From the NCBI RefSeq assembly GCF_006345805.1, contig NW_021825402.1, positions 1 to 15,752 of the forward strand: DNA of 15,752 nt, given 5' to 3'. The position numbers and the translations under genes are program-made. Within the stretch, counting starts at the first letter, position 1. Every line of letters begins with the position of its first letter. A model generated the notes under the pieces. The model was given only the letters and a program-made list of their open reading frames with translations. It was not told the origin of the DNA and made no database searches. This document shows positions 3,701 to 14,839 of the stretch, in pieces. This DNA comes from Octopus sinensis (Eukaryota).

Positions 3701-4034
3701 GGCTTGAATGACGCTAAAAGGTTTGTTAGTCAACCATATCGATTCGATTAATTATCTCACCCTGGTTAACCTCGTACCTATTTTATCGCCCTATCTTTTT
3801 CCCCACCTCCACTGTTCGATTACCCGATATACATAAACAACAACACAGTGGTTTTCCTTCTTGATTAATGAGTAAATACATTGTAAATACATGCAAACGT
3901 ATACAAAAAATACACAAGCATCTATCTAGATACTACACAGACACACACACAACACACACACACACATATTGTCTCGAATAATTGGCTCAAGGCCAAGGTG
4001 GAGTAAATAGAATACATAGGCCATAGTATCCAAC

Positions 4035-4108
4035 GGTACTTATTTTATTGACTCCCGAGAAGATGAGAGACACAGTCAACGTCAGCGGAATATGAACTCT
4101 GATCATAA
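4035..4108 (-). mobile_element. Degraded tRNA-derived SINE fragment (same family as 8781-8992)
   Basis: GGTACTTATTTTATTGACTCCCGAGAAGATGAGAGACACAGTCAACGTCAGCGGAATATGAACTC aligns to 8855-8920 in this window. Confidence 0.75.
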
Positions 4109-4115
4109 AGAAATC

Positions 4116-4250
4116 TAGCAGTTCGGCAAAAGTAACCAATAGAATAAGTATTAGGTTTACAAAAATAAGTCCTGGGGTCGAGTTCTTCAAGTAGAAACGG
4201 TGCTCCAGCATGGCCGCAGTCAAATGACTAAAACGTGTGTCAGTAAAGAG
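4116..4250 (+). mobile_element. 3' part of a SINE (same family as 13870-14266)
   Basis: AATAAGTCCTGGGGTCGAG...CGGTGCTCCAGCATGGCCGCAGTCAAATGACT is the reverse complement of 13891-13960. Confidence 0.8.
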
Positions 4251-4366
4251 CACTGTGTTGACTATATATATTCACACACACACGCACACTCACACACACA
4301 CAAACACACGCACAAACACACAGGCACTCACTCAGACACACACATATATATGCATATGTGACTACA

Positions 4367-6029: not shown

Positions 6030-6320
<291 letters not shown>

Positions 6321-6761: not shown

Positions 6762-6962
6762 AAGGCGGCGAGTTGGCAGAATCATTAGCGCGTCGCACAA
6801 ATTGCTTAGAGACATATAGGATATTTACGTTCTGAGTTCAAATACCGCCGAGATCAACTTTGGCTTCAATTGTTACGGGTTTTATAAAATAAGAACCAGT
6901 CCAAGCACTAAGATCAATACGTGCAACTCTTTCCTCTAAATGTGACTATATTAGAAACGATT
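6762..6962 (+). mobile_element. tRNA-derived SINE, near full length, running into an (ATT)n tail
   Basis: AAGGCGGCGAGTTGGCAGAATCATTAG (A-box-like) and GAGTTCAAATACCG (B-box-like); aligns with 9023-9198. Confidence 0.85.
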
Positions 6963-7647: not shown

Positions 7648-7786
7648 ACCCGAAACGATGAAAGGTTGACTTCGCCTTTGATTTTTTTGGGGGTCGATAA
7701 ATCAAGTACCAGTCGAGCACCAGTAAACGACTTACCCCTCCCCCACCCCATATATTGCAGGCCTTGTGTCTTTAGTAGGAAGGATT
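7645..7786 (+). mobile_element. SINE 3' half (7666-7786) preceded by an inverted fragment of the same segment (7645-7665)
   Basis: GGGGGTCGATAAATCAAGTACCAGTCGAGCAC...GGCCTTGTGTCTTTAGTAGGAAGGATT matches the family; ATGACCCGAAACGATGAAAGG is the antisense piece. Confidence 0.8.
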
Positions 7787-8215: not shown

Positions 8216-8780
8216 AATTAATGGCTTTATTGTATTCACTAATTTCCTAAACGTTTCGTTCAGTTTTACCTCCGCCTCACACCCTATCATTCTCTCCTCT
8301 TTCTTTATATCTCTTTCTCTCTCTCTCTCTCAATCTCTCTCTCTCTCTTTCTATCTCTCTTACACACTTTGATGTCATTCTAGAAGTTATCTTGTATGTA
8401 TCATAAAAATTGTACAACGACACACAATTAACCAGTGCGTTAATTAATGAATTAATTAAGTTATTAACTATTTTAATAATGTTTTTCTTACATTCGACTT
8501 GAGGTCACGCATGTTTGTAAATGAGAGACTGTCGCAGTTCAGTCCAGTCATATATACGCTGACCTTCCCCCCACCCCGCATATATGAAGGATGGAGTAAT
8601 GTATTAGTGAAGGCAGTGCGGATGGTAGTGCTAATGGTATTGTTAGAGTAGAGTCATTATCACGCTAATATATTCACCACCAGCACCACTGCAATCACCA
8701 TCACCACCTCCACCATCGACGACAAAATATTATCAATACCATCACAACTCGCAACCACACTAATCGAAGACAATAATAAT

Positions 8781-8992
8781 CTTTACTACTATAGGCACAA
8801 GGCCTGAAATTTGGGGAACAGAGTAAGTCGATTACATCGACCCAAGTGCTCGACTGGTACTTATTTTATCGACCCCGAAAGGATCAAAGGCAAAGTCGTC
8901 CTCGGCGGAATTTGAACTCAGAACGTAACGGCAGACGAATTACTGCTAGGCATTTCGCCCGGCGTGCTAACGTTTCTGCCAGCTCGCTGCCT
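8781..8992 (-). mobile_element. Full-length, well-preserved tRNA-derived SINE
   Basis: Reverse complement begins AGGCAGCGAGCTGGCAGAAACGTTAGC, has B-box-like GAGTTCAAATTCCG, and ends GGCCTTGTGCCTATAGTAGTAAAGATTATT. Confidence 0.9.
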
Positions 8993-9337: not shown

Positions 9338-9570
9338 CACATGACTGTGTGATAAGAAGTTTGATTCCGAATCACATGGTTCGGGGTTCAGTCCCACTGG
9401 GTGCCAACCTTTGGAAACGGCTTCTACCATAGCCTTAGCCCGACCAAATCATTGTAAGTGGATTTGGAGGAAGGAAACTGAAAGAAGCCTGTCGCATGTG
9501 TCTGTGTGTGTATATGTATGTGTGCGTGTGTGTTTTTGTTTGTGTTTGTCTCCCACCACATATATATATA
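9338..9570 (+). mobile_element. tRNA-derived SINE, second family, with internal microsatellite, truncated
   Basis: GACTGTGTGATAAGAAG...GGGTTCAGTCCCACTG...GGAAACTGAAAGAAGCCTGTCG is the reverse complement of 14109-14266. Confidence 0.85.
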
Positions 9571-9677
9571 CTCACACACATATATATATATGTATTGTAT
9601 GTAAGTATGTTGTATTATGTATGTATTAATACATATATATATACACCTATATATATATTAATATATATATAAATGTA

Positions 9678-9722
<45 letters not shown>

Positions 9723-9830
9723 CACACACCCACATATATATATATATATATATAATATATATTTATATAGGTGTCGTGAAGCAAATAAAATAGAACACAA
9801 AACATGTGTATATGTATGGTGTGTGTGAGT

Positions 9831-10429: not shown

Positions 10430-10839
10430 ATATTATTGTTGCTGTTGTTGTTGTTCTCGGTGGTGGTGGTGGGGGTGATGGCGGTGGTAGTAGTGGTTTG
10501 GAGGTAGTGTTGTAGTTGTTGTAGTTGTTGTTGGTGGTGATGGCGGTGGTGATGTTGGTCGTAGTGGTGGTGGTGGTGGTAATGCTGAATGCGTTGTTGA
10601 TGGTGGTTATGATTGTTGTTGTGGTGGTGGTCGTCATCGTGGTAGCAATGGAAATGGTGGTGGTATCGGCAGTGGCAATGGTGAGGGTGGTGATAATGGC
10701 GGTGTGGTTATAGCGGCGGTGGTGGTGGTGAGTTTGGAGTCTAGCATTTATGGTGGCCGCCGATCTTCCTAATGAAAATGTATCATGACTGGTGTTGTTT
10801 TTGTTGTTGTTGTTGCTGTTATTATTATTAATATTATTA

Positions 10840-10908
<69 letters not shown>

Positions 10909-11090
10909 TATTTATGTGCAGTGGTTGTTGTTGTTGTCATTGTTGTTATATTCTTATCTTTATTCGTGTAAATTGAGTTATGATGGTGATGTTGTTGTTG
11001 TTGTTGTTGCTGTTGGTGGTGGTGGTGGTGGTGGTGGTGGTGGTGGCGGCGGCGGTGGTGGCGGTGGTTGTGGTGGCGGTATTGGTGGTG
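10430..11090. repeat. Degenerate trinucleotide low-complexity region: (GTT)n, (GGT)n, (ATT)n
   Basis: Direct inspection; source of the poly-V/T/I/G ORFs. Confidence 0.95.
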
Positions 11091-11666
11091 GGGATTCTAG
11101 TGGAAGCCATGGAACGGTAAGGGGTGATGCATCTCATTGTCTTTATTCTTGTTGAGAGTCCTGGGTTTATGTAGAAGTATATAATGTCCGTGGCAGCGTG
11201 TGGAGACATAGAGAGACATAGAGAGAGAGGGGGGAGAGACTAAGGGAGAGAGCCTTAGAGTGGAAGAGAGAGAGAGAGATGGAGAGGGAGAAAGAAATAG
11301 ATAGATACACAGATAGACGGGTAGATAGATAAACCCGAGTTAAATGTGTCGACTGGACGCGATTATCGCCCACTCAATCTTGATCATTTCTACAATTGAA
11401 ACTAATTAAAAACAAACAATACTTCGCTAACGCCTCTGTAATTATATAATGAAATAAGGAGTTCAAAATGGGATTACAAAATGGGATGCGATTACAAAGA
11501 TGGCCGAATGTTGTGCATTAAACGATCTTAACTATGGAAGGAAATCGGAGATATAATTGAAATTTTTAAGATAATGGAACAAGGCTATGAGTTTAACTAT
11601 TTTAATTATGAAAGGAAGTCGGTGATATAACTGAAATAGTTAACAAGGTTCAGCGTAAAGTATAAA

Positions 11667-11887
11667 CCCTTTTGTTATCATATTTCTGTTGAGATCCTCT
11701 GTGTTTCTTTCAATTTATTTTAAATATAATAAAGAATTTAGTAAAATAACTTAGTTATCATTAAGCTAATGTTAGGAACATAAATTGTGACTAAGGTTTG
11801 TTGAAGGTTTTAATTCAGAACTTTTGAAGACAAGACAATTGTACTACAGAGTCAGACCCAGTTTCAGCCGGGTTGGTAATAAAGGCG
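11667..11887 (+). mobile_element. piggyBac-like MITE, copy 1
   Basis: (TAAA)CCCTTTTGTTATC...GGTAATAAAGGCG(TCAA); degenerate TIRs and TTAA flanks. Confidence 0.8.
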
Positions 11888-11918
11888 TCAAGAATTGTTT
11901 TTCTGTTATATATTTTAA

Positions 11919-12139
11919 CCCTTTCGTTACTATATTTATTTTGAGATGCTCTGTGTTTCTTTCAATTAATTTTAGATATTACAAAGAATTTAGTAAAATA
12001 ACTTAGTTATCATTAAGCTTATGTTAGGAATATAAAGTGTTACTAAGGCTTGGTGGAAGGTTTTAATTCAGAACTTTTGAAATCAAGACATTTGTACTCA
12101 GAGCCAGTGGCAGTTTCAGCTGGGTTGGAAACAAAAGGG
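11919..12139 (+). mobile_element. piggyBac-like MITE, copy 2
   Basis: (TTAA)CCCTTTCGTTAC...GGAAACAAAAGGG(TTAC). Confidence 0.85.
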
Positions 12140-12170
12140 TTACGAATTGTTTCTCTGTTATATATTTGAA

Positions 12171-12390
12171 CCATTTCGTCACTCTACTCATTAAAATGCT
12201 CTTTTTTTCTTTCAATTAATTCTAAATATAACAAAGAATTTACAAAAATAACTTAACTATCACTAAGTTATTGTTAGTAACATAAATTGCGACTAAGGTT
12301 TGGTGGAGTATTTTATTTCAGAACTTTTGAAAACAAGACACTTGTACTACAGAGCCAGACGCACTTTCAGCTGGGTTGGTATCGAAAGGG
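12171..12390 (+). mobile_element. piggyBac-like MITE, copy 3
   Basis: (TGAA)CCATTTCGTCAC...GGTATCGAAAGGG(TTAA). Confidence 0.85.
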
Positions 12391-13149
12391 TTAAACGATA
12401 TTAATTATGGAAGGAAATATCAGATATAATTGAACTATTAAAGATAATGAAACATGGTTCAGTGTTATGCTGAAACAATACGGGAGCAAAATTGAAATAT
12501 TTAAGATAATGAAACATAGCTAAGTGCTGTACATTTATCGACGTTAAGTGTGGAAGGATATCGGAGAAATGATTGAAATATTTATGTTAATGAAATATGT
12601 TTGGGTGTTTTGCGTTAAACTATGGTAGGTATGGAAGTAAATTGGAGACATAATTGAAATATATACAATAATGAAACAATATCAAGAAGATCTATAAAAT
12701 TTATGCATGAAAATAGAAATAATACTTTTAAGAAGTGGAATTTCCAAGGGTTACGACAGGTTCAATAAAATGTCATAAGCGGGGATGTGGGATGGGGGCG
12801 AAGCGAGGAGAAAGAAGAGGAGGAGGAGGGGGAAAAATTGGTTAGAAAGGAAATGTAGGAGAAGCGCACAGACGAAGCGGAAGATGGAGAGAGAGAGAGA
12901 GAGGAAGGAGGGAAAGAGGGGAGAGAGGGGGAGCGAGGGGGAGAAAAGAGAGAGGAGAAAAATCAAAGTAGAAAAAGCGATCGCAGGGAATTATTTTCGA
13001 TTTTTTTTTGTTTTTTGGTAATTTCAAATATTTTCAAAATATTTTCAGACAACATGGCCCCATCCTGCCCTGCTCCACCTTCATGCAATTCCATGTGTTT
13101 CAAGATGTCTTCACTTGTCTACACATATCTTTTAATGCATTTCGAATAA

Positions 13150-13314: not shown

Positions 13315-13368
<54 letters not shown>

Positions 13369-13570
13369 TACATATATACATAATATATATAAATATATAT
13401 GTGTTTGTGTTTTTTTTATGTATGTTTATTTTAAATATATGTATAAATACGTGTCTACATGTATATATATATTGTACTGTATATACATGCATTTATGTAT
13501 ATATACATATACATTAAATGTGTATATATAATATATACATATATACATGCAAACAGACAAACACACATAT
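13150..13570. repeat. (TA)n/(CA)n/(TG)n low-complexity region
   Basis: Direct inspection. Confidence 0.95.
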
Positions 13571-13869: not shown

Positions 13870-14266
13870 TCTTTTATTTGTTTATTTGTTTCAGTCATTT
13901 GACTGTGGCCATGCTGGGACACCGCCTTGAACGGATTTAGTCGAACAAATCGACCCCAGGACATTTTTTATTAAGCCTAGTACATCGGTTGTCATGCGAT
14001 GGTGAGAGGACAAACTCAGACACAAAGACACACACATAGATACACACACATACACACGCACGAACACACACACACACACATACACACGCACACATATATG
14101 CATATATACGACAGGCTTCTTTCAGTTTCCGTCAAACAAATCAACTCACAAGGCTTTGGTCAGCCCGAGGCTAAAGTGGAAGAGACTTGCCCAAGGTGCC
14201 ACGCAATGGGAATGAATACGAGACCGTGTGATTGCGAAGGGAGCTTCTTACCACACGGCCACACCG
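13870..14266 (-). mobile_element. Near full-length SINE, second family: tRNA-like head, internal (TG)n, internal deletion near 13983
   Basis: Head is complementary to 9338-9494, middle to 14694-14726 and 3' part to 4160-4235. The segment seen at 4116-4150 and 14727-14745 is absent. Confidence 0.9.
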
Positions 14267-14272
14267 AAACGG

Positions 14273-14502
14273 CACACCGTCGGTTACGACGACGAGTGTT
14301 GTTCCGGTTGATTTTATCAACAGGACAGCCTGCTCGTGAAATTAACGTGCAAGTGGCCGAGCACTATACAGACTTGTGTACCCTTTACGTAGTTCTCAAG
14401 GAGATTCAGCGTGGCATACAAGGTGACAAAAACTGACCCTTTTTGAAATACAGGCCCTGTCCATTTTTGCCACCTGAGTTAACTCTGGTGCAACGTAAAA
14501 TA
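14273..14502 (-). mobile_element. 5'-truncated SINE of a third family
   Basis: GGCACACCGTCGGTTACGACGACG...CAGCCTGCTCGTGAAATTAACGTGCAAGTGG...TTTTTGCCACCTGAG is recognised from memory as a recurrent octopus SINE body; no second copy in the window. Confidence 0.6.
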
Positions 14503-14617
14503 ATATATCGACGTAAAGTCCGGACAGTACGAAAAAGGCTAGCAGACCCACTTCGAAGTCCTTGTCACCACTCATCATCTAAAAGTAAAATGAATATGGT
14601 CCCTACAAAAGCTATTA

Positions 14618-14747
14618 GATTTGGTAGATGGAAACTGAAAGAAGCCCGTTCTATATTATATATATATATATGTATGTATGTATATGTGTCGGTGTTTGTC
14701 CTCCTACCATCGCTTGATAACCGATGCTGGTGTGTTTACGTCCCTGT
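14618..14747 (+). mobile_element. Internal fragment of a second-family SINE
   Basis: GATTTGGTAGATGGAAACTGAAAGAAGCCCG...GTTTGTCCTCCTACCATCGCTTGATAACCGATGCTGGTGTGTTTACGTCCC; complementary to 13983-14142. Confidence 0.85.
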
Positions 14748-14839
14748 ATGTAGTTGTGTATGTGTATGTGTTTGTGTGTGTGTTTATATTCCAAATTCAA
14801 AACGTTGAATAAGCAGATTTATCGATGAACTCACGAAAA

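What the first reader, a model, noticed from the sequence alone, without database searches (positions are those of the whole stretch)
11663..12394. MITE trimer with a constant foreign spacer at a single TTAA: composite transposon or nascent satellite
Seen: three ~221 bp TIR elements in the same orientation with a 252 bp period. Both internal junctions carry nearly the same 23-nt spacer (GAATTGTTT[T/C]TCTGTTATATATT, 11892-11914 and 12144-12166) between TTAA-like sites. Removing the whole trimer restores the host minisatellite at its own TTAA: GGTTCAGCGTAAAGTA|TTAA|ACGATATTAATTATGGAAGG, matching GTGCA-TTAA-ACGATCTTAACTATGG in unit 1. So the spacer does not look locally derived. Inference: a dimer or trimer with captured spacer moved as one composite unit using the outer TIRs, or a concatemer was integrated, possibly followed by unequal crossover. 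This would be a route from MITE to satellite DNA.
Basis: partly seen in the sequence, partly recalled or inferred. Interest (0 to 1): 0.7.

Follow-up and report, generated by a model that had tools for sequence, protein, structure and literature searches.

The report
Old piggyBac-type MITE trimer, foreign spacer
Three decayed copies of a small piggyBac-type transposon, joined head to tail by the same 23-base foreign linker, sit as one block in a single TTAA site; this probably records a transposon pair jumping as a unit, but tandem arrays of this kind are already known.

Summary
At 11663-12394 there are three same-orientation elements of 221/221/220 bp with a 252-bp period. Each ends in a ~12-nt inverted repeat, CCCTTTCGTTAC...GTAACGAAAGGG, and is flanked by TTAA-like quartets. 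The two internal junctions each hold the same 23-nt spacer (22/23 identical).

Removing the block and one TTAA restores a host minisatellite unit without gaps. The spacer shows no significant similarity to the flanks or the element.

The block therefore most likely arrived as a pre-formed multimer whose junction arose at another locus. The likeliest path is two insertions into TTAAs 27 bp apart, movement from the outer ends (macrotransposon-like), and unequal exchange to add the third copy.

I could not test this across loci, because no available collection held the source genome.

"Nascent satellite" is not supported. There are only three copies, 82-86.5% identical, with no homogenisation, so this is an old inert relic.

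Tandem arrays of full-size piggyBac-like MITEs with conserved inter-element gaps were reported in corals in 2010. MITE-to-satellite routes and macrotransposons are also established.

Verdict: real feature, interpretation partly supported, modest novelty. Interest 0.3.

The parts
11496..11662 (.). Host minisatellite, left part (units u1, u2 and the first 25 nt of u3; 74-81-bp units)
   Evidence: the repeat finder families D9/D11; unit alignment
11663..11666 (+). Left copy of the outer target-site duplication, now TAAA (one change from TTAA)
   Evidence: Sequence; the reconstructed empty site has one TTAA
11667..11887 (+). M1, 221-nt element copy. Left inverted repeat CCCTTTTGTTAT at 11667-11678; right end ...GGTAATAAAGGCG at 11875-11887
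   Evidence: nhmmer E = 5.5e-71
11888..11891 (+). TCAA, a degenerate TTAA to the right of M1
11892..11914 (+). Spacer 1, GAATTGTTTTTCTGTTATATATT (83% A+T), not similar to the host flanks or to the element
11915..11918 (+). TTAA to the left of M2
11919..12139 (+). M2, 221-nt element copy. Left inverted repeat CCCTTTCGTTAC at 11919-11930; right end GGAAACAAAAGGG at 12127-12139
   Evidence: nhmmer E = 5.1e-72
12140..12143 (+). TTAC, a degenerate TTAA to the right of M2
12144..12166 (+). Spacer 2, GAATTGTTTCTCTGTTATATATT (22/23 identical to spacer 1)
12167..12170 (+). TGAA, a degenerate TTAA to the left of M3
12171..12390 (+). M3, 220-nt element copy and the most diverged. Left end CCATTTCGTCAC at 12171-12182; right inverted repeat GGTATCGAAAGGG at 12378-12390
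   Evidence: nhmmer E = 9.1e-70
12391..12394 (+). Right copy of the outer target-site duplication, TTAA
12395..12690 (.). Host minisatellite, right part (rest of u3, then u4-u6)

Best explanation
This is an old, inert head-to-tail trimer of a ~221-bp non-autonomous DNA transposon with piggyBac-type hallmarks: a TTAA target and 12-nt inverted repeats beginning CCCTTT.

The ancestral repeat unit was TTAA-M-TTAA-spacer (4 + 221 + 4 + 23 = 252 bp). The block M-TTAA-sp-TTAA-M-TTAA-sp-TTAA-M lies in one TTAA of a host minisatellite.

Most likely history (inferred):
1. At another locus, two copies inserted in the same orientation into two TTAA sites 27 bp apart. This left a complete TTAA on each side of the native 23 nt.
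2. A piggyBac-type transposase paired the outermost left and right ends and moved the pair, with the captured 23 nt, as one unit into this TTAA. This is macrotransposon-like.
3. One out-of-register (252-bp) exchange, either at the donor or here, added the third copy and duplicated the spacer.
4. All copies then decayed neutrally by about 7-9% per lineage.

Shown: the anatomy, the single outer target duplication, restoration of the host unit, and the non-local spacer.

Inferred: the donor locus, use of the outer ends, and the order of events.

No present-day function is indicated.
For: - Period-252 array with three full copies.
- The ends match the piggyBac definition in PMC5381638: TTAA target duplication, inverted repeats of 12-19 bp, first six bases C[C/A/T][C/A/T][T/G/A][T/A/G][T/G/A]. 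They also match the CC[C/T]T hallmark in PMC2872659.
- Kolobok/T2 MITEs, the other TTAA users, end in AGGRR, which this element does not.
- The array starts and ends exactly at inverted repeats, and the outer quartets are TAAA/TTAA.
- Removing the block restores a gap-free host unit with a single TTAA, at the position where three of four paralogous units also have TTAA.
- The spacer has TTAA-like quartets on both sides at both junctions, as expected for two separate insertions rather than one shared target site.
- The spacer matches neither flank nor the element and is absent elsewhere in the window.
- Movement of two linked elements plus intervening DNA from their outer ends is documented for Ac macrotransposons (PMC9910405).
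Against: - No second locus with the junction, no donor locus, no dispersed monomer and no autonomous partner could be examined.
- There is no other copy of the element in the 15.7-kb window, so even the claim that it is a dispersed family rests on structure alone.
- A 23-nt, 83% A+T spacer gives little power to exclude a diverged local origin. The whole-minisatellite comparison gave p = 0.08-0.10.
- The pattern of shared differences does not show the chimera expected from a dimer-to-trimer exchange, in which the middle copy would be the 5' part of the last copy plus the 3' part of the first. If anything it trends the other way, but not significantly (permutation p = 0.06-0.16).
Confidence: 0.5

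Rival explanations
1. Origin in place. One monomer inserted at the host TTAA, and replication slippage or unequal exchange then duplicated a 252-bp unit made of the element plus 27 bp. The spacer would be local or filler DNA that can no longer be recognised. This is the mechanism Wang et al. proposed for coral CMITE arrays.
For: - Coral arrays with highly similar elements and gaps were attributed to slippage (PMC2872659).
- The spacer is short and A+T-rich, so homology tests are weak.
- The best match to the host minisatellite, on the reverse strand, has p about 0.08-0.10.
Against: - A duplicated unit of element plus flank must leave a copy of the spacer next to the first or last copy. The left flank matches 7/23 and the right flank 6/23 in register, with p = 0.4-0.8.
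- The array begins and ends exactly at inverted repeats.
- The host unit is restored without gaps and has no room for the 23 nt.
Confidence: 0.2
2. Copying by repair rather than transposition. A single copy already sat at this TTAA. A break within it was repaired from a tandem array of the same family elsewhere, with the two ends invading out of register. This copied M-sp-M-sp-M into the resident copy while keeping its original ends and target duplication.
For: It explains the same anatomy without requiring use of the outer ends. The uneven distribution of shared differences (M3-unique changes concentrated in columns 1-152) would fit a patchwork origin.
Against: The mosaic signal is not significant. 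A donor array is still required and has not been observed. No direct evidence exists.
Confidence: 0.15
3. Concatemer integration. A 252-bp circle (element plus spacer), popped out of a donor dimer, was amplified by rolling-circle replication, and a three-unit piece was integrated.
For: Rolling-circle replication followed by insertion of the concatemer is one of the three mechanisms reviewed for tandem transposons, and was proposed for the Bari1 array (PMC5932611). The 252/252-bp periods are exact.
Against: The block ends precisely at inverted repeats with a TTAA duplication, which points to a transposase cut rather than random integration of a concatemer. It still needs a donor dimer. There is no evidence for circles.
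Confidence: 0.08
4. Three independent insertions into a pre-existing 27-bp host repeat, or an assembly artefact.
For: TTAA quartets flank every copy.
Against: - The host unit has no 27-bp repeat and is restored only if both spacers are removed.
- Three same-orientation hits are improbable.
- The copies differ by 13-18%, so a collapsed or duplicated assembly of one copy is excluded.
Confidence: 0.02

Closest known systems
Tandem arrays of full-size piggyBac-like MITEs (CMITE) in Acropora corals (Wang et al. 2010, PMC2872659)
   Same: These are small TTAA-targeting elements with CC[C/T]T ends, repeated head to tail as whole elements. One reported array has gaps between elements, and both the elements and the gaps are highly similar.
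   Different: The coral arrays were attributed to replication slippage, and no empty-site or flank test was reported. Here the flanks exclude a simple local origin of the gap sequence, and the whole array sits in one target duplication. No sequence similarity between the two families was tested.
Ac/Ds macrotransposons of maize (Huang and Dooner 2008; Wang et al. 2022; cited in PMC9910405)
   Same: Two linked elements and the DNA between them move from the outermost left and right ends, leaving a single target duplication around the composite.
   Different: Different superfamily (hAT, 8-bp duplication), kilobase scale, and shown experimentally. Here the event is only inferred, from one old locus with 23 nt captured.
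Tandem transposon dimers by double insertion, expanding by unequal exchange (McGurk and Barbash 2018, PMC5932611)
   Same: Head-to-tail whole DNA transposons serve as seeds for satellite arrays. Identical junction sequence in every unit indicates descent from one dimer (hobo array, R1 array with 33-nt junctions).
   Different: That model puts only the local target duplication in the junction. Here the junction is TTAA + 23 foreign nt + TTAA, and the array did not expand.
Tandem-repeat-containing MITEs and MITE-derived satellites (pearl and DTC84 in bivalves, Xstir/Xmix in Xenopus; listed in PMC6947457 and PMC10048060)
   Same: Short tandem arrays of fewer than 10 units are associated with small non-autonomous DNA transposons, including in molluscs.
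   Different: In those families an internal core is repeated inside one pair of inverted repeats. Here every unit carries its own pair of inverted repeats and its own TTAA quartets.

Membership tests
piggyBac superfamily, non-autonomous element (MITE) | TTAA target-site duplication | tested here: met
   The outer quartets are TAAA/TTAA (7 of 8 bases). The reconstructed empty site has one TTAA, conserved in paralogous host units. All six quartets are within one change of TTAA.
piggyBac superfamily, non-autonomous element (MITE) | Terminal inverted repeats of 12-19 bp beginning C[C/A/T][C/A/T][T/G/A][T/A/G][T/G/A] (CC[C/T]T hallmark) | tested here: met
   Consensus CCCTTTCGTTAC against the reverse complement of the right end, CCCTTT(T/C)GTTAC: 12 of 13. 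Definitions come from PMC5381638 and PMC2872659.
piggyBac superfamily, non-autonomous element (MITE) | Small and non-coding | tested here: met
   220-221 nt with stops in all frames. No Rfam or tRNA match in the window.
piggyBac superfamily, non-autonomous element (MITE) | Dispersed multi-copy family, with insertion polymorphism or empty sites | not testable with these tools
   There is no further copy in the window and the source genome is not in any searchable collection. Only a paralogue-based empty site is available.
piggyBac superfamily, non-autonomous element (MITE) | Autonomous partner encoding a piggyBac transposase with matching ends | not testable with these tools
   No transposase gene is in the window. 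piggyBac elements are reported in Octopus vulgaris (PMC13282606), but the organism of this window is not established.
Kolobok / T2-MITE | TTAA target with terminal AGGRR (RR) motif | tested here: not met
   The ends are CCC...GGG, not AGG.... The definition is from PMC6004289.
Satellite DNA (nascent or established) | Many tandem units with homogenisation (high identity within the array) | tested here: not met
   There are three units, 82-86.5% identical, Jukes-Cantor 0.14-0.18. The array boundaries are fixed at the inverted repeats.
Composite / macrotransposon insertion | One target duplication around the whole composite, with the host restored on removal | tested here: met
Composite / macrotransposon insertion | Intervening DNA foreign to the insertion site | tested here: inconclusive
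   No significant similarity to the flanks (p = 0.4-0.8) or to the host minisatellite (p = 0.08-0.10). However, 23 A+T-rich bases give low power.
Composite / macrotransposon insertion | A donor locus, or the same composite at other loci with different flanks | not testable with these tools
   All routes to the source genome failed.
Double-insertion tandem dimer (McGurk and Barbash) | The junction consists of the local target duplication only | tested here: not met
   The junction is 31 nt: TTAA + 23 nt + TTAA.
Tandem-repeat-containing MITE (pearl / DTC84 / Xstir type) | Repeats lie inside a single pair of inverted repeats | tested here: not met
   Each unit has its own pair of inverted repeats and its own TTAA quartets.

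The most novel reading that the evidence does not exclude
The dimer M-TTAA-23 nt-TTAA-M is itself a mobile composite family in this genome. In that case piggyBac-type transposase would repeatedly use the outer ends of closely spaced MITEs, scattering ready-made tandem seeds (each able to grow by unequal exchange) across the chromosomes. This would be a transposase-driven way of dispersing proto-satellites, and has not been demonstrated for piggyBac MITEs.
Probability: 0.25. Interest if true: 0.55.

Novelty: new member of a known kind. Interest (0 to 1): 0.3.

Why it matters
How whole transposons without internal repeats become tandem arrays is still debated; double insertion, rolling circle and slippage have all been proposed. 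This locus offers an unusually clean natural record. The surrounding host minisatellite acts as a built-in empty-site control, and it shows that a multi-copy block with a non-local linker entered one TTAA. If the same junction is found at other loci, composite transposition would be added to the mechanisms that seed dispersed short arrays. On present evidence it is one old, three-copy relic of a kind already described for piggyBac-like MITEs, with no sign of function or ongoing expansion.

Tried and rejected
1. DNA scans of public collections for the element core.
- Pattern TTCAGAACTTTTGAANNCAAGACA gave 0 hits in metagenome and genome contigs.
- Pattern AAAGAATTTANNAAAATAACTTA gave 23 loci (L001-L023). 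Under an nhmmer profile of the element, all matched only over roughly 25-60 nt around the searched pattern, at E >= 0.03, so they are chance matches.

2. Using the open frame across both junctions (alignment A1) as a handle to find other genomic copies: no protein shares words with it. The exact 60-aa ORF is not on record.

3. Exact look-ups of two long window ORFs, to reach the same locus in other assemblies: not on record.

4. A chimeric query of translations of the window's SINE-like repeats, to reach annotated proteins and thereby genomic loci of the source organism: 8000 candidates, none at E <= 0.001.

5. Pfam on the non-repetitive ORFs, Rfam and ARAGORN on the whole window: nothing above threshold.

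6. Local origin of the spacer (either flank, either strand, or the element itself): rejected at the power available.

7. Chimera test for dimer-to-trimer unequal exchange. A simple Fisher test gives p = 0.012, but the breakpoint-corrected permutation gives p = 0.06-0.16, so the result is not significant.

8. Special conservation of the spacer: 1 difference in 23 is within expectation (P = 0.10-0.19).

9. A PIF/Harbinger reading (3-bp TAA duplication, ends ACCC...GGGT) was considered. It fits the outer junction equally well but is not favoured, from my own knowledge of Harbinger ends and untested here, because CCC...GGG with TTAA is the piggyBac hallmark.

10. The supplement of the Octopus vulgaris repeat paper holds no consensus library.

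Full report
**What is there**

Tandem Repeats Finder reports one array at 11665-12388 with period 252, 2.9 copies, 84% matches and score 990. The repeat finder gives spacings of 252 and 250. Reading and aligning the sequence gives this layout:

| Coordinates | Feature |
|---|---|
| 11663-66 | TAAA |
| 11667-11887 | M1 (221 nt) |
| 11888-91 | TCAA |
| 11892-11914 | spacer 1 (23 nt) |
| 11915-18 | TTAA |
| 11919-12139 | M2 (221 nt) |
| 12140-43 | TTAC |
| 12144-66 | spacer 2 (23 nt) |
| 12167-70 | TGAA |
| 12171-12390 | M3 (220 nt) |
| 12391-94 | TTAA |

The spacers are GAATTGTTTTTCTGTTATATATT and GAATTGTTTCTCTGTTATATATT, identical at 22 of 23 positions. They occur nowhere else in the window even with three mismatches, where none is expected by chance. 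An nhmmer profile of the element finds only these three copies in the 15.7-kb window.

**What the unit is**

The left-end consensus is CCCTTTCGTTAC(T). The reverse complement of the right-end consensus is CCCTTT(T/C)GTTAC(C). That is 12 of 13 positions, with a chance probability of about 1e-6 at this base composition.

These boundaries were not chosen to make an inverted repeat. They are fixed independently, by where homology to the host minisatellite stops.

All six quartets flanking the three copies are within one change of TTAA. A TTAA duplication together with 12-19-bp inverted repeats whose first six bases fit C[C/A/T][C/A/T][T/G/A][T/A/G][T/G/A] is the published definition of piggyBac-like elements (PMC5381638). 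CC[C/T]T is called the hallmark terminal motif (PMC2872659). The other TTAA-targeting superfamily, Kolobok with its T2 MITEs, ends in AGGRR (PMC6004289), which this element does not.

The element is non-coding and matches no Rfam family or tRNA. By structure, then, it is a piggyBac-type MITE. Two defining features could not be tested: whether it is a dispersed family, and whether it has an autonomous partner.

**The insertion site**

The surroundings (about 11496-12690) are a degenerate minisatellite of 74-81-bp units (families D9/D11; autocorrelation peak at 81). Joining 11662 to the TTAA at 12391 gives a unit reading ...GTAAAGTA TTAA ACGATATTAATTATGGAAGG...

This unit aligns without gaps to units u1, u2, u5 and u6. 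Three of those four have TTAA at the same place. The whole 728-bp block therefore lies between one target duplication, and the host has no room for the 23-nt spacer.

**Is the spacer local?**

- In register, the spacer matches the 23 nt to the left of the array at 7/23 and the 23 nt to the right at 6/23.
- Best local alignment scores, on both strands and compared with 2000 shuffles, give p = 0.4-0.8 for the immediate flanks, 0.08-0.10 for the whole host minisatellite, and 0.4-0.6 against the element itself.

A simple local tandem duplication of 'element plus flank' must leave a spacer copy beside the first or last element, and none is there. The test has limited power, because the spacer is only 23 bases and 83% A+T.

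**Most likely history**

The ancestral unit was TTAA-M-TTAA-spacer (4 + 221 + 4 + 23 = 252 bp). A full TTAA on both sides of the spacer is what two separate insertions into TTAAs 27 bp apart would leave. A double insertion into one site would leave only a single TTAA in the junction, which is the McGurk and Barbash model (PMC5932611).

The most economical account is as follows:
1. A dimer formed at a locus where the 23 nt is native.
2. It was mobilised from its outermost ends into this TTAA, as documented for Ac macrotransposons (PMC9910405).
3. One out-of-register exchange, before or after the move, added the third copy.

Steps 1-3 are inference. What is shown is the anatomy, the single outer duplication, the restored host unit, and the spacer's lack of detectable similarity to local sequence.

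I rank three rivals below this:
- An origin in place with an unrecognisable or filler spacer.
- Break repair copied from a donor array elsewhere.
- Integration of a rolling-circle concatemer.

Three independent insertions, or an assembly artefact, are contradicted.

**Age and the 'nascent satellite' idea**

Pairwise identities are 86.5% (M1-M2), 82.1% (M2-M3) and 81.8% (M1-M3), counting gaps. Jukes-Cantor distances are 0.14-0.18.

Unique changes number 17 (M1), 13 (M2) and 27 (M3), which is roughly star-like with M3 the most diverged. There is no homogenisation and no growth beyond three copies. This is an old static relic, not an emerging satellite.

The spacer's single difference is within expectation (P = 0.10-0.19), so nothing suggests selection on it. 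M3-unique changes cluster in the first two-thirds of the element (Fisher p = 0.012), but a breakpoint-corrected permutation test gives p = 0.06-0.16. The expected chimeric signature of a dimer-to-trimer exchange is therefore neither confirmed nor excluded.

**What could not be done**

That needs the source genome, and no available collection contains it:
- Two DNA scans each of metagenome and prokaryote genome contigs gave nothing or chance matches.
- The open frame across the junctions has no relatives.
- Exact look-ups of window ORFs are not on record.
- A chimeric query built from the window's SINE-like repeats found no annotated protein that could lead to other genomic loci.

The organism itself is not established by any tool.

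**Comparison with what is known**

- Wang et al. (2010) described tandem arrays of full-size piggyBac-like MITEs in Acropora corals. One had gaps between the elements, with both elements and gaps highly similar, and the authors attributed this to replication slippage.
- MITE-derived satellites and MITEs that contain tandem repeats are listed in reviews (PMC6947457; PMC10048060).
- Tandem dimers of DNA transposons as seeds of satellites are established in Drosophila.
- Composite movement from outer ends is established for Ac.

This locus is therefore a new example of a known kind. Its one distinctive point is that the host minisatellite supplies an internal control, and this control argues against slippage in place and for arrival as a block.

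**Verdict**

'Nascent satellite' is not supported. Interest 0.3.

Noticed in passing
window 11496-11662 and 12395-12690: The host sequence is itself a degenerate minisatellite of about six 74-81-bp units, with consensus roughly ...CATTAAACGATNTTAANTATGGAAGGAAATCGGAGATATAATTGAAATATTTAAGATAATGAAACA... One unit (u4, about 62 nt) is shortened. TRF does not detect the array at default scores.
   Followed up: partly
window 8778-8992(+), 7668-7786(-), 4001-4108(+), 6763-6909(-): Four copies of a SINE-like dispersed repeat, 72-75% identical, with the core AGTGCTCGACTGGTACTTATTTTATCGACCCCGAAAGGATCAAAGGCAAAGTC...GGCGGAATTTGAACTCAGAACGTAA. No Rfam or tRNA match.
   Followed up: partly
window 14054-14256(+) vs 9347-9545(-); 14618-14699 vs 9461-9543 and 14064-14142: A second dispersed repeat family, 72-77% identical, adjacent to (AC)n/(GT)n tracts.
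   Followed up: no
window 13888-13983 vs 4148-4234(-): A third short dispersed repeat, 75% identical, containing ...GTCCTGGGGTCGA...CAGCATGGCCRCAGTCAAATGACT.... In the copy near 4000-4260 it lies directly next to the first family, so the two may be parts of one longer element.
   Followed up: no
window 13999-14808 (+): Two ORFs of 145 and 121 aa lie in the same frame, separated by a single stop. There is no Pfam match and the region is partly made of the second repeat family. It is probably a chance open frame in a slightly G+C-richer stretch (43%).
   Followed up: partly
whole window, e.g. 1586-1822 (AAT)n, 2413-2690 (AGA)n, 6035-6316 (TATC)n, 10459-11091 (GGT/TGG)n, 9560-9769 and 13318-13545 (AT)n: Microsatellite density is extreme: 114 TRF rows in 15.7 kb, with strong strand asymmetry of G and A in 1-3 kb and 10-13 kb. 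No protein-coding gene is recognisable.
   Followed up: no
window 11743-11770, 11995-12022, 12247-12274: Each element copy carries a small internal palindrome, AAATAACTTAGTTAT, seen as a weak nhmmer match of the profile to its own reverse strand. Whether it is a subterminal binding motif is unknown.
   Followed up: no
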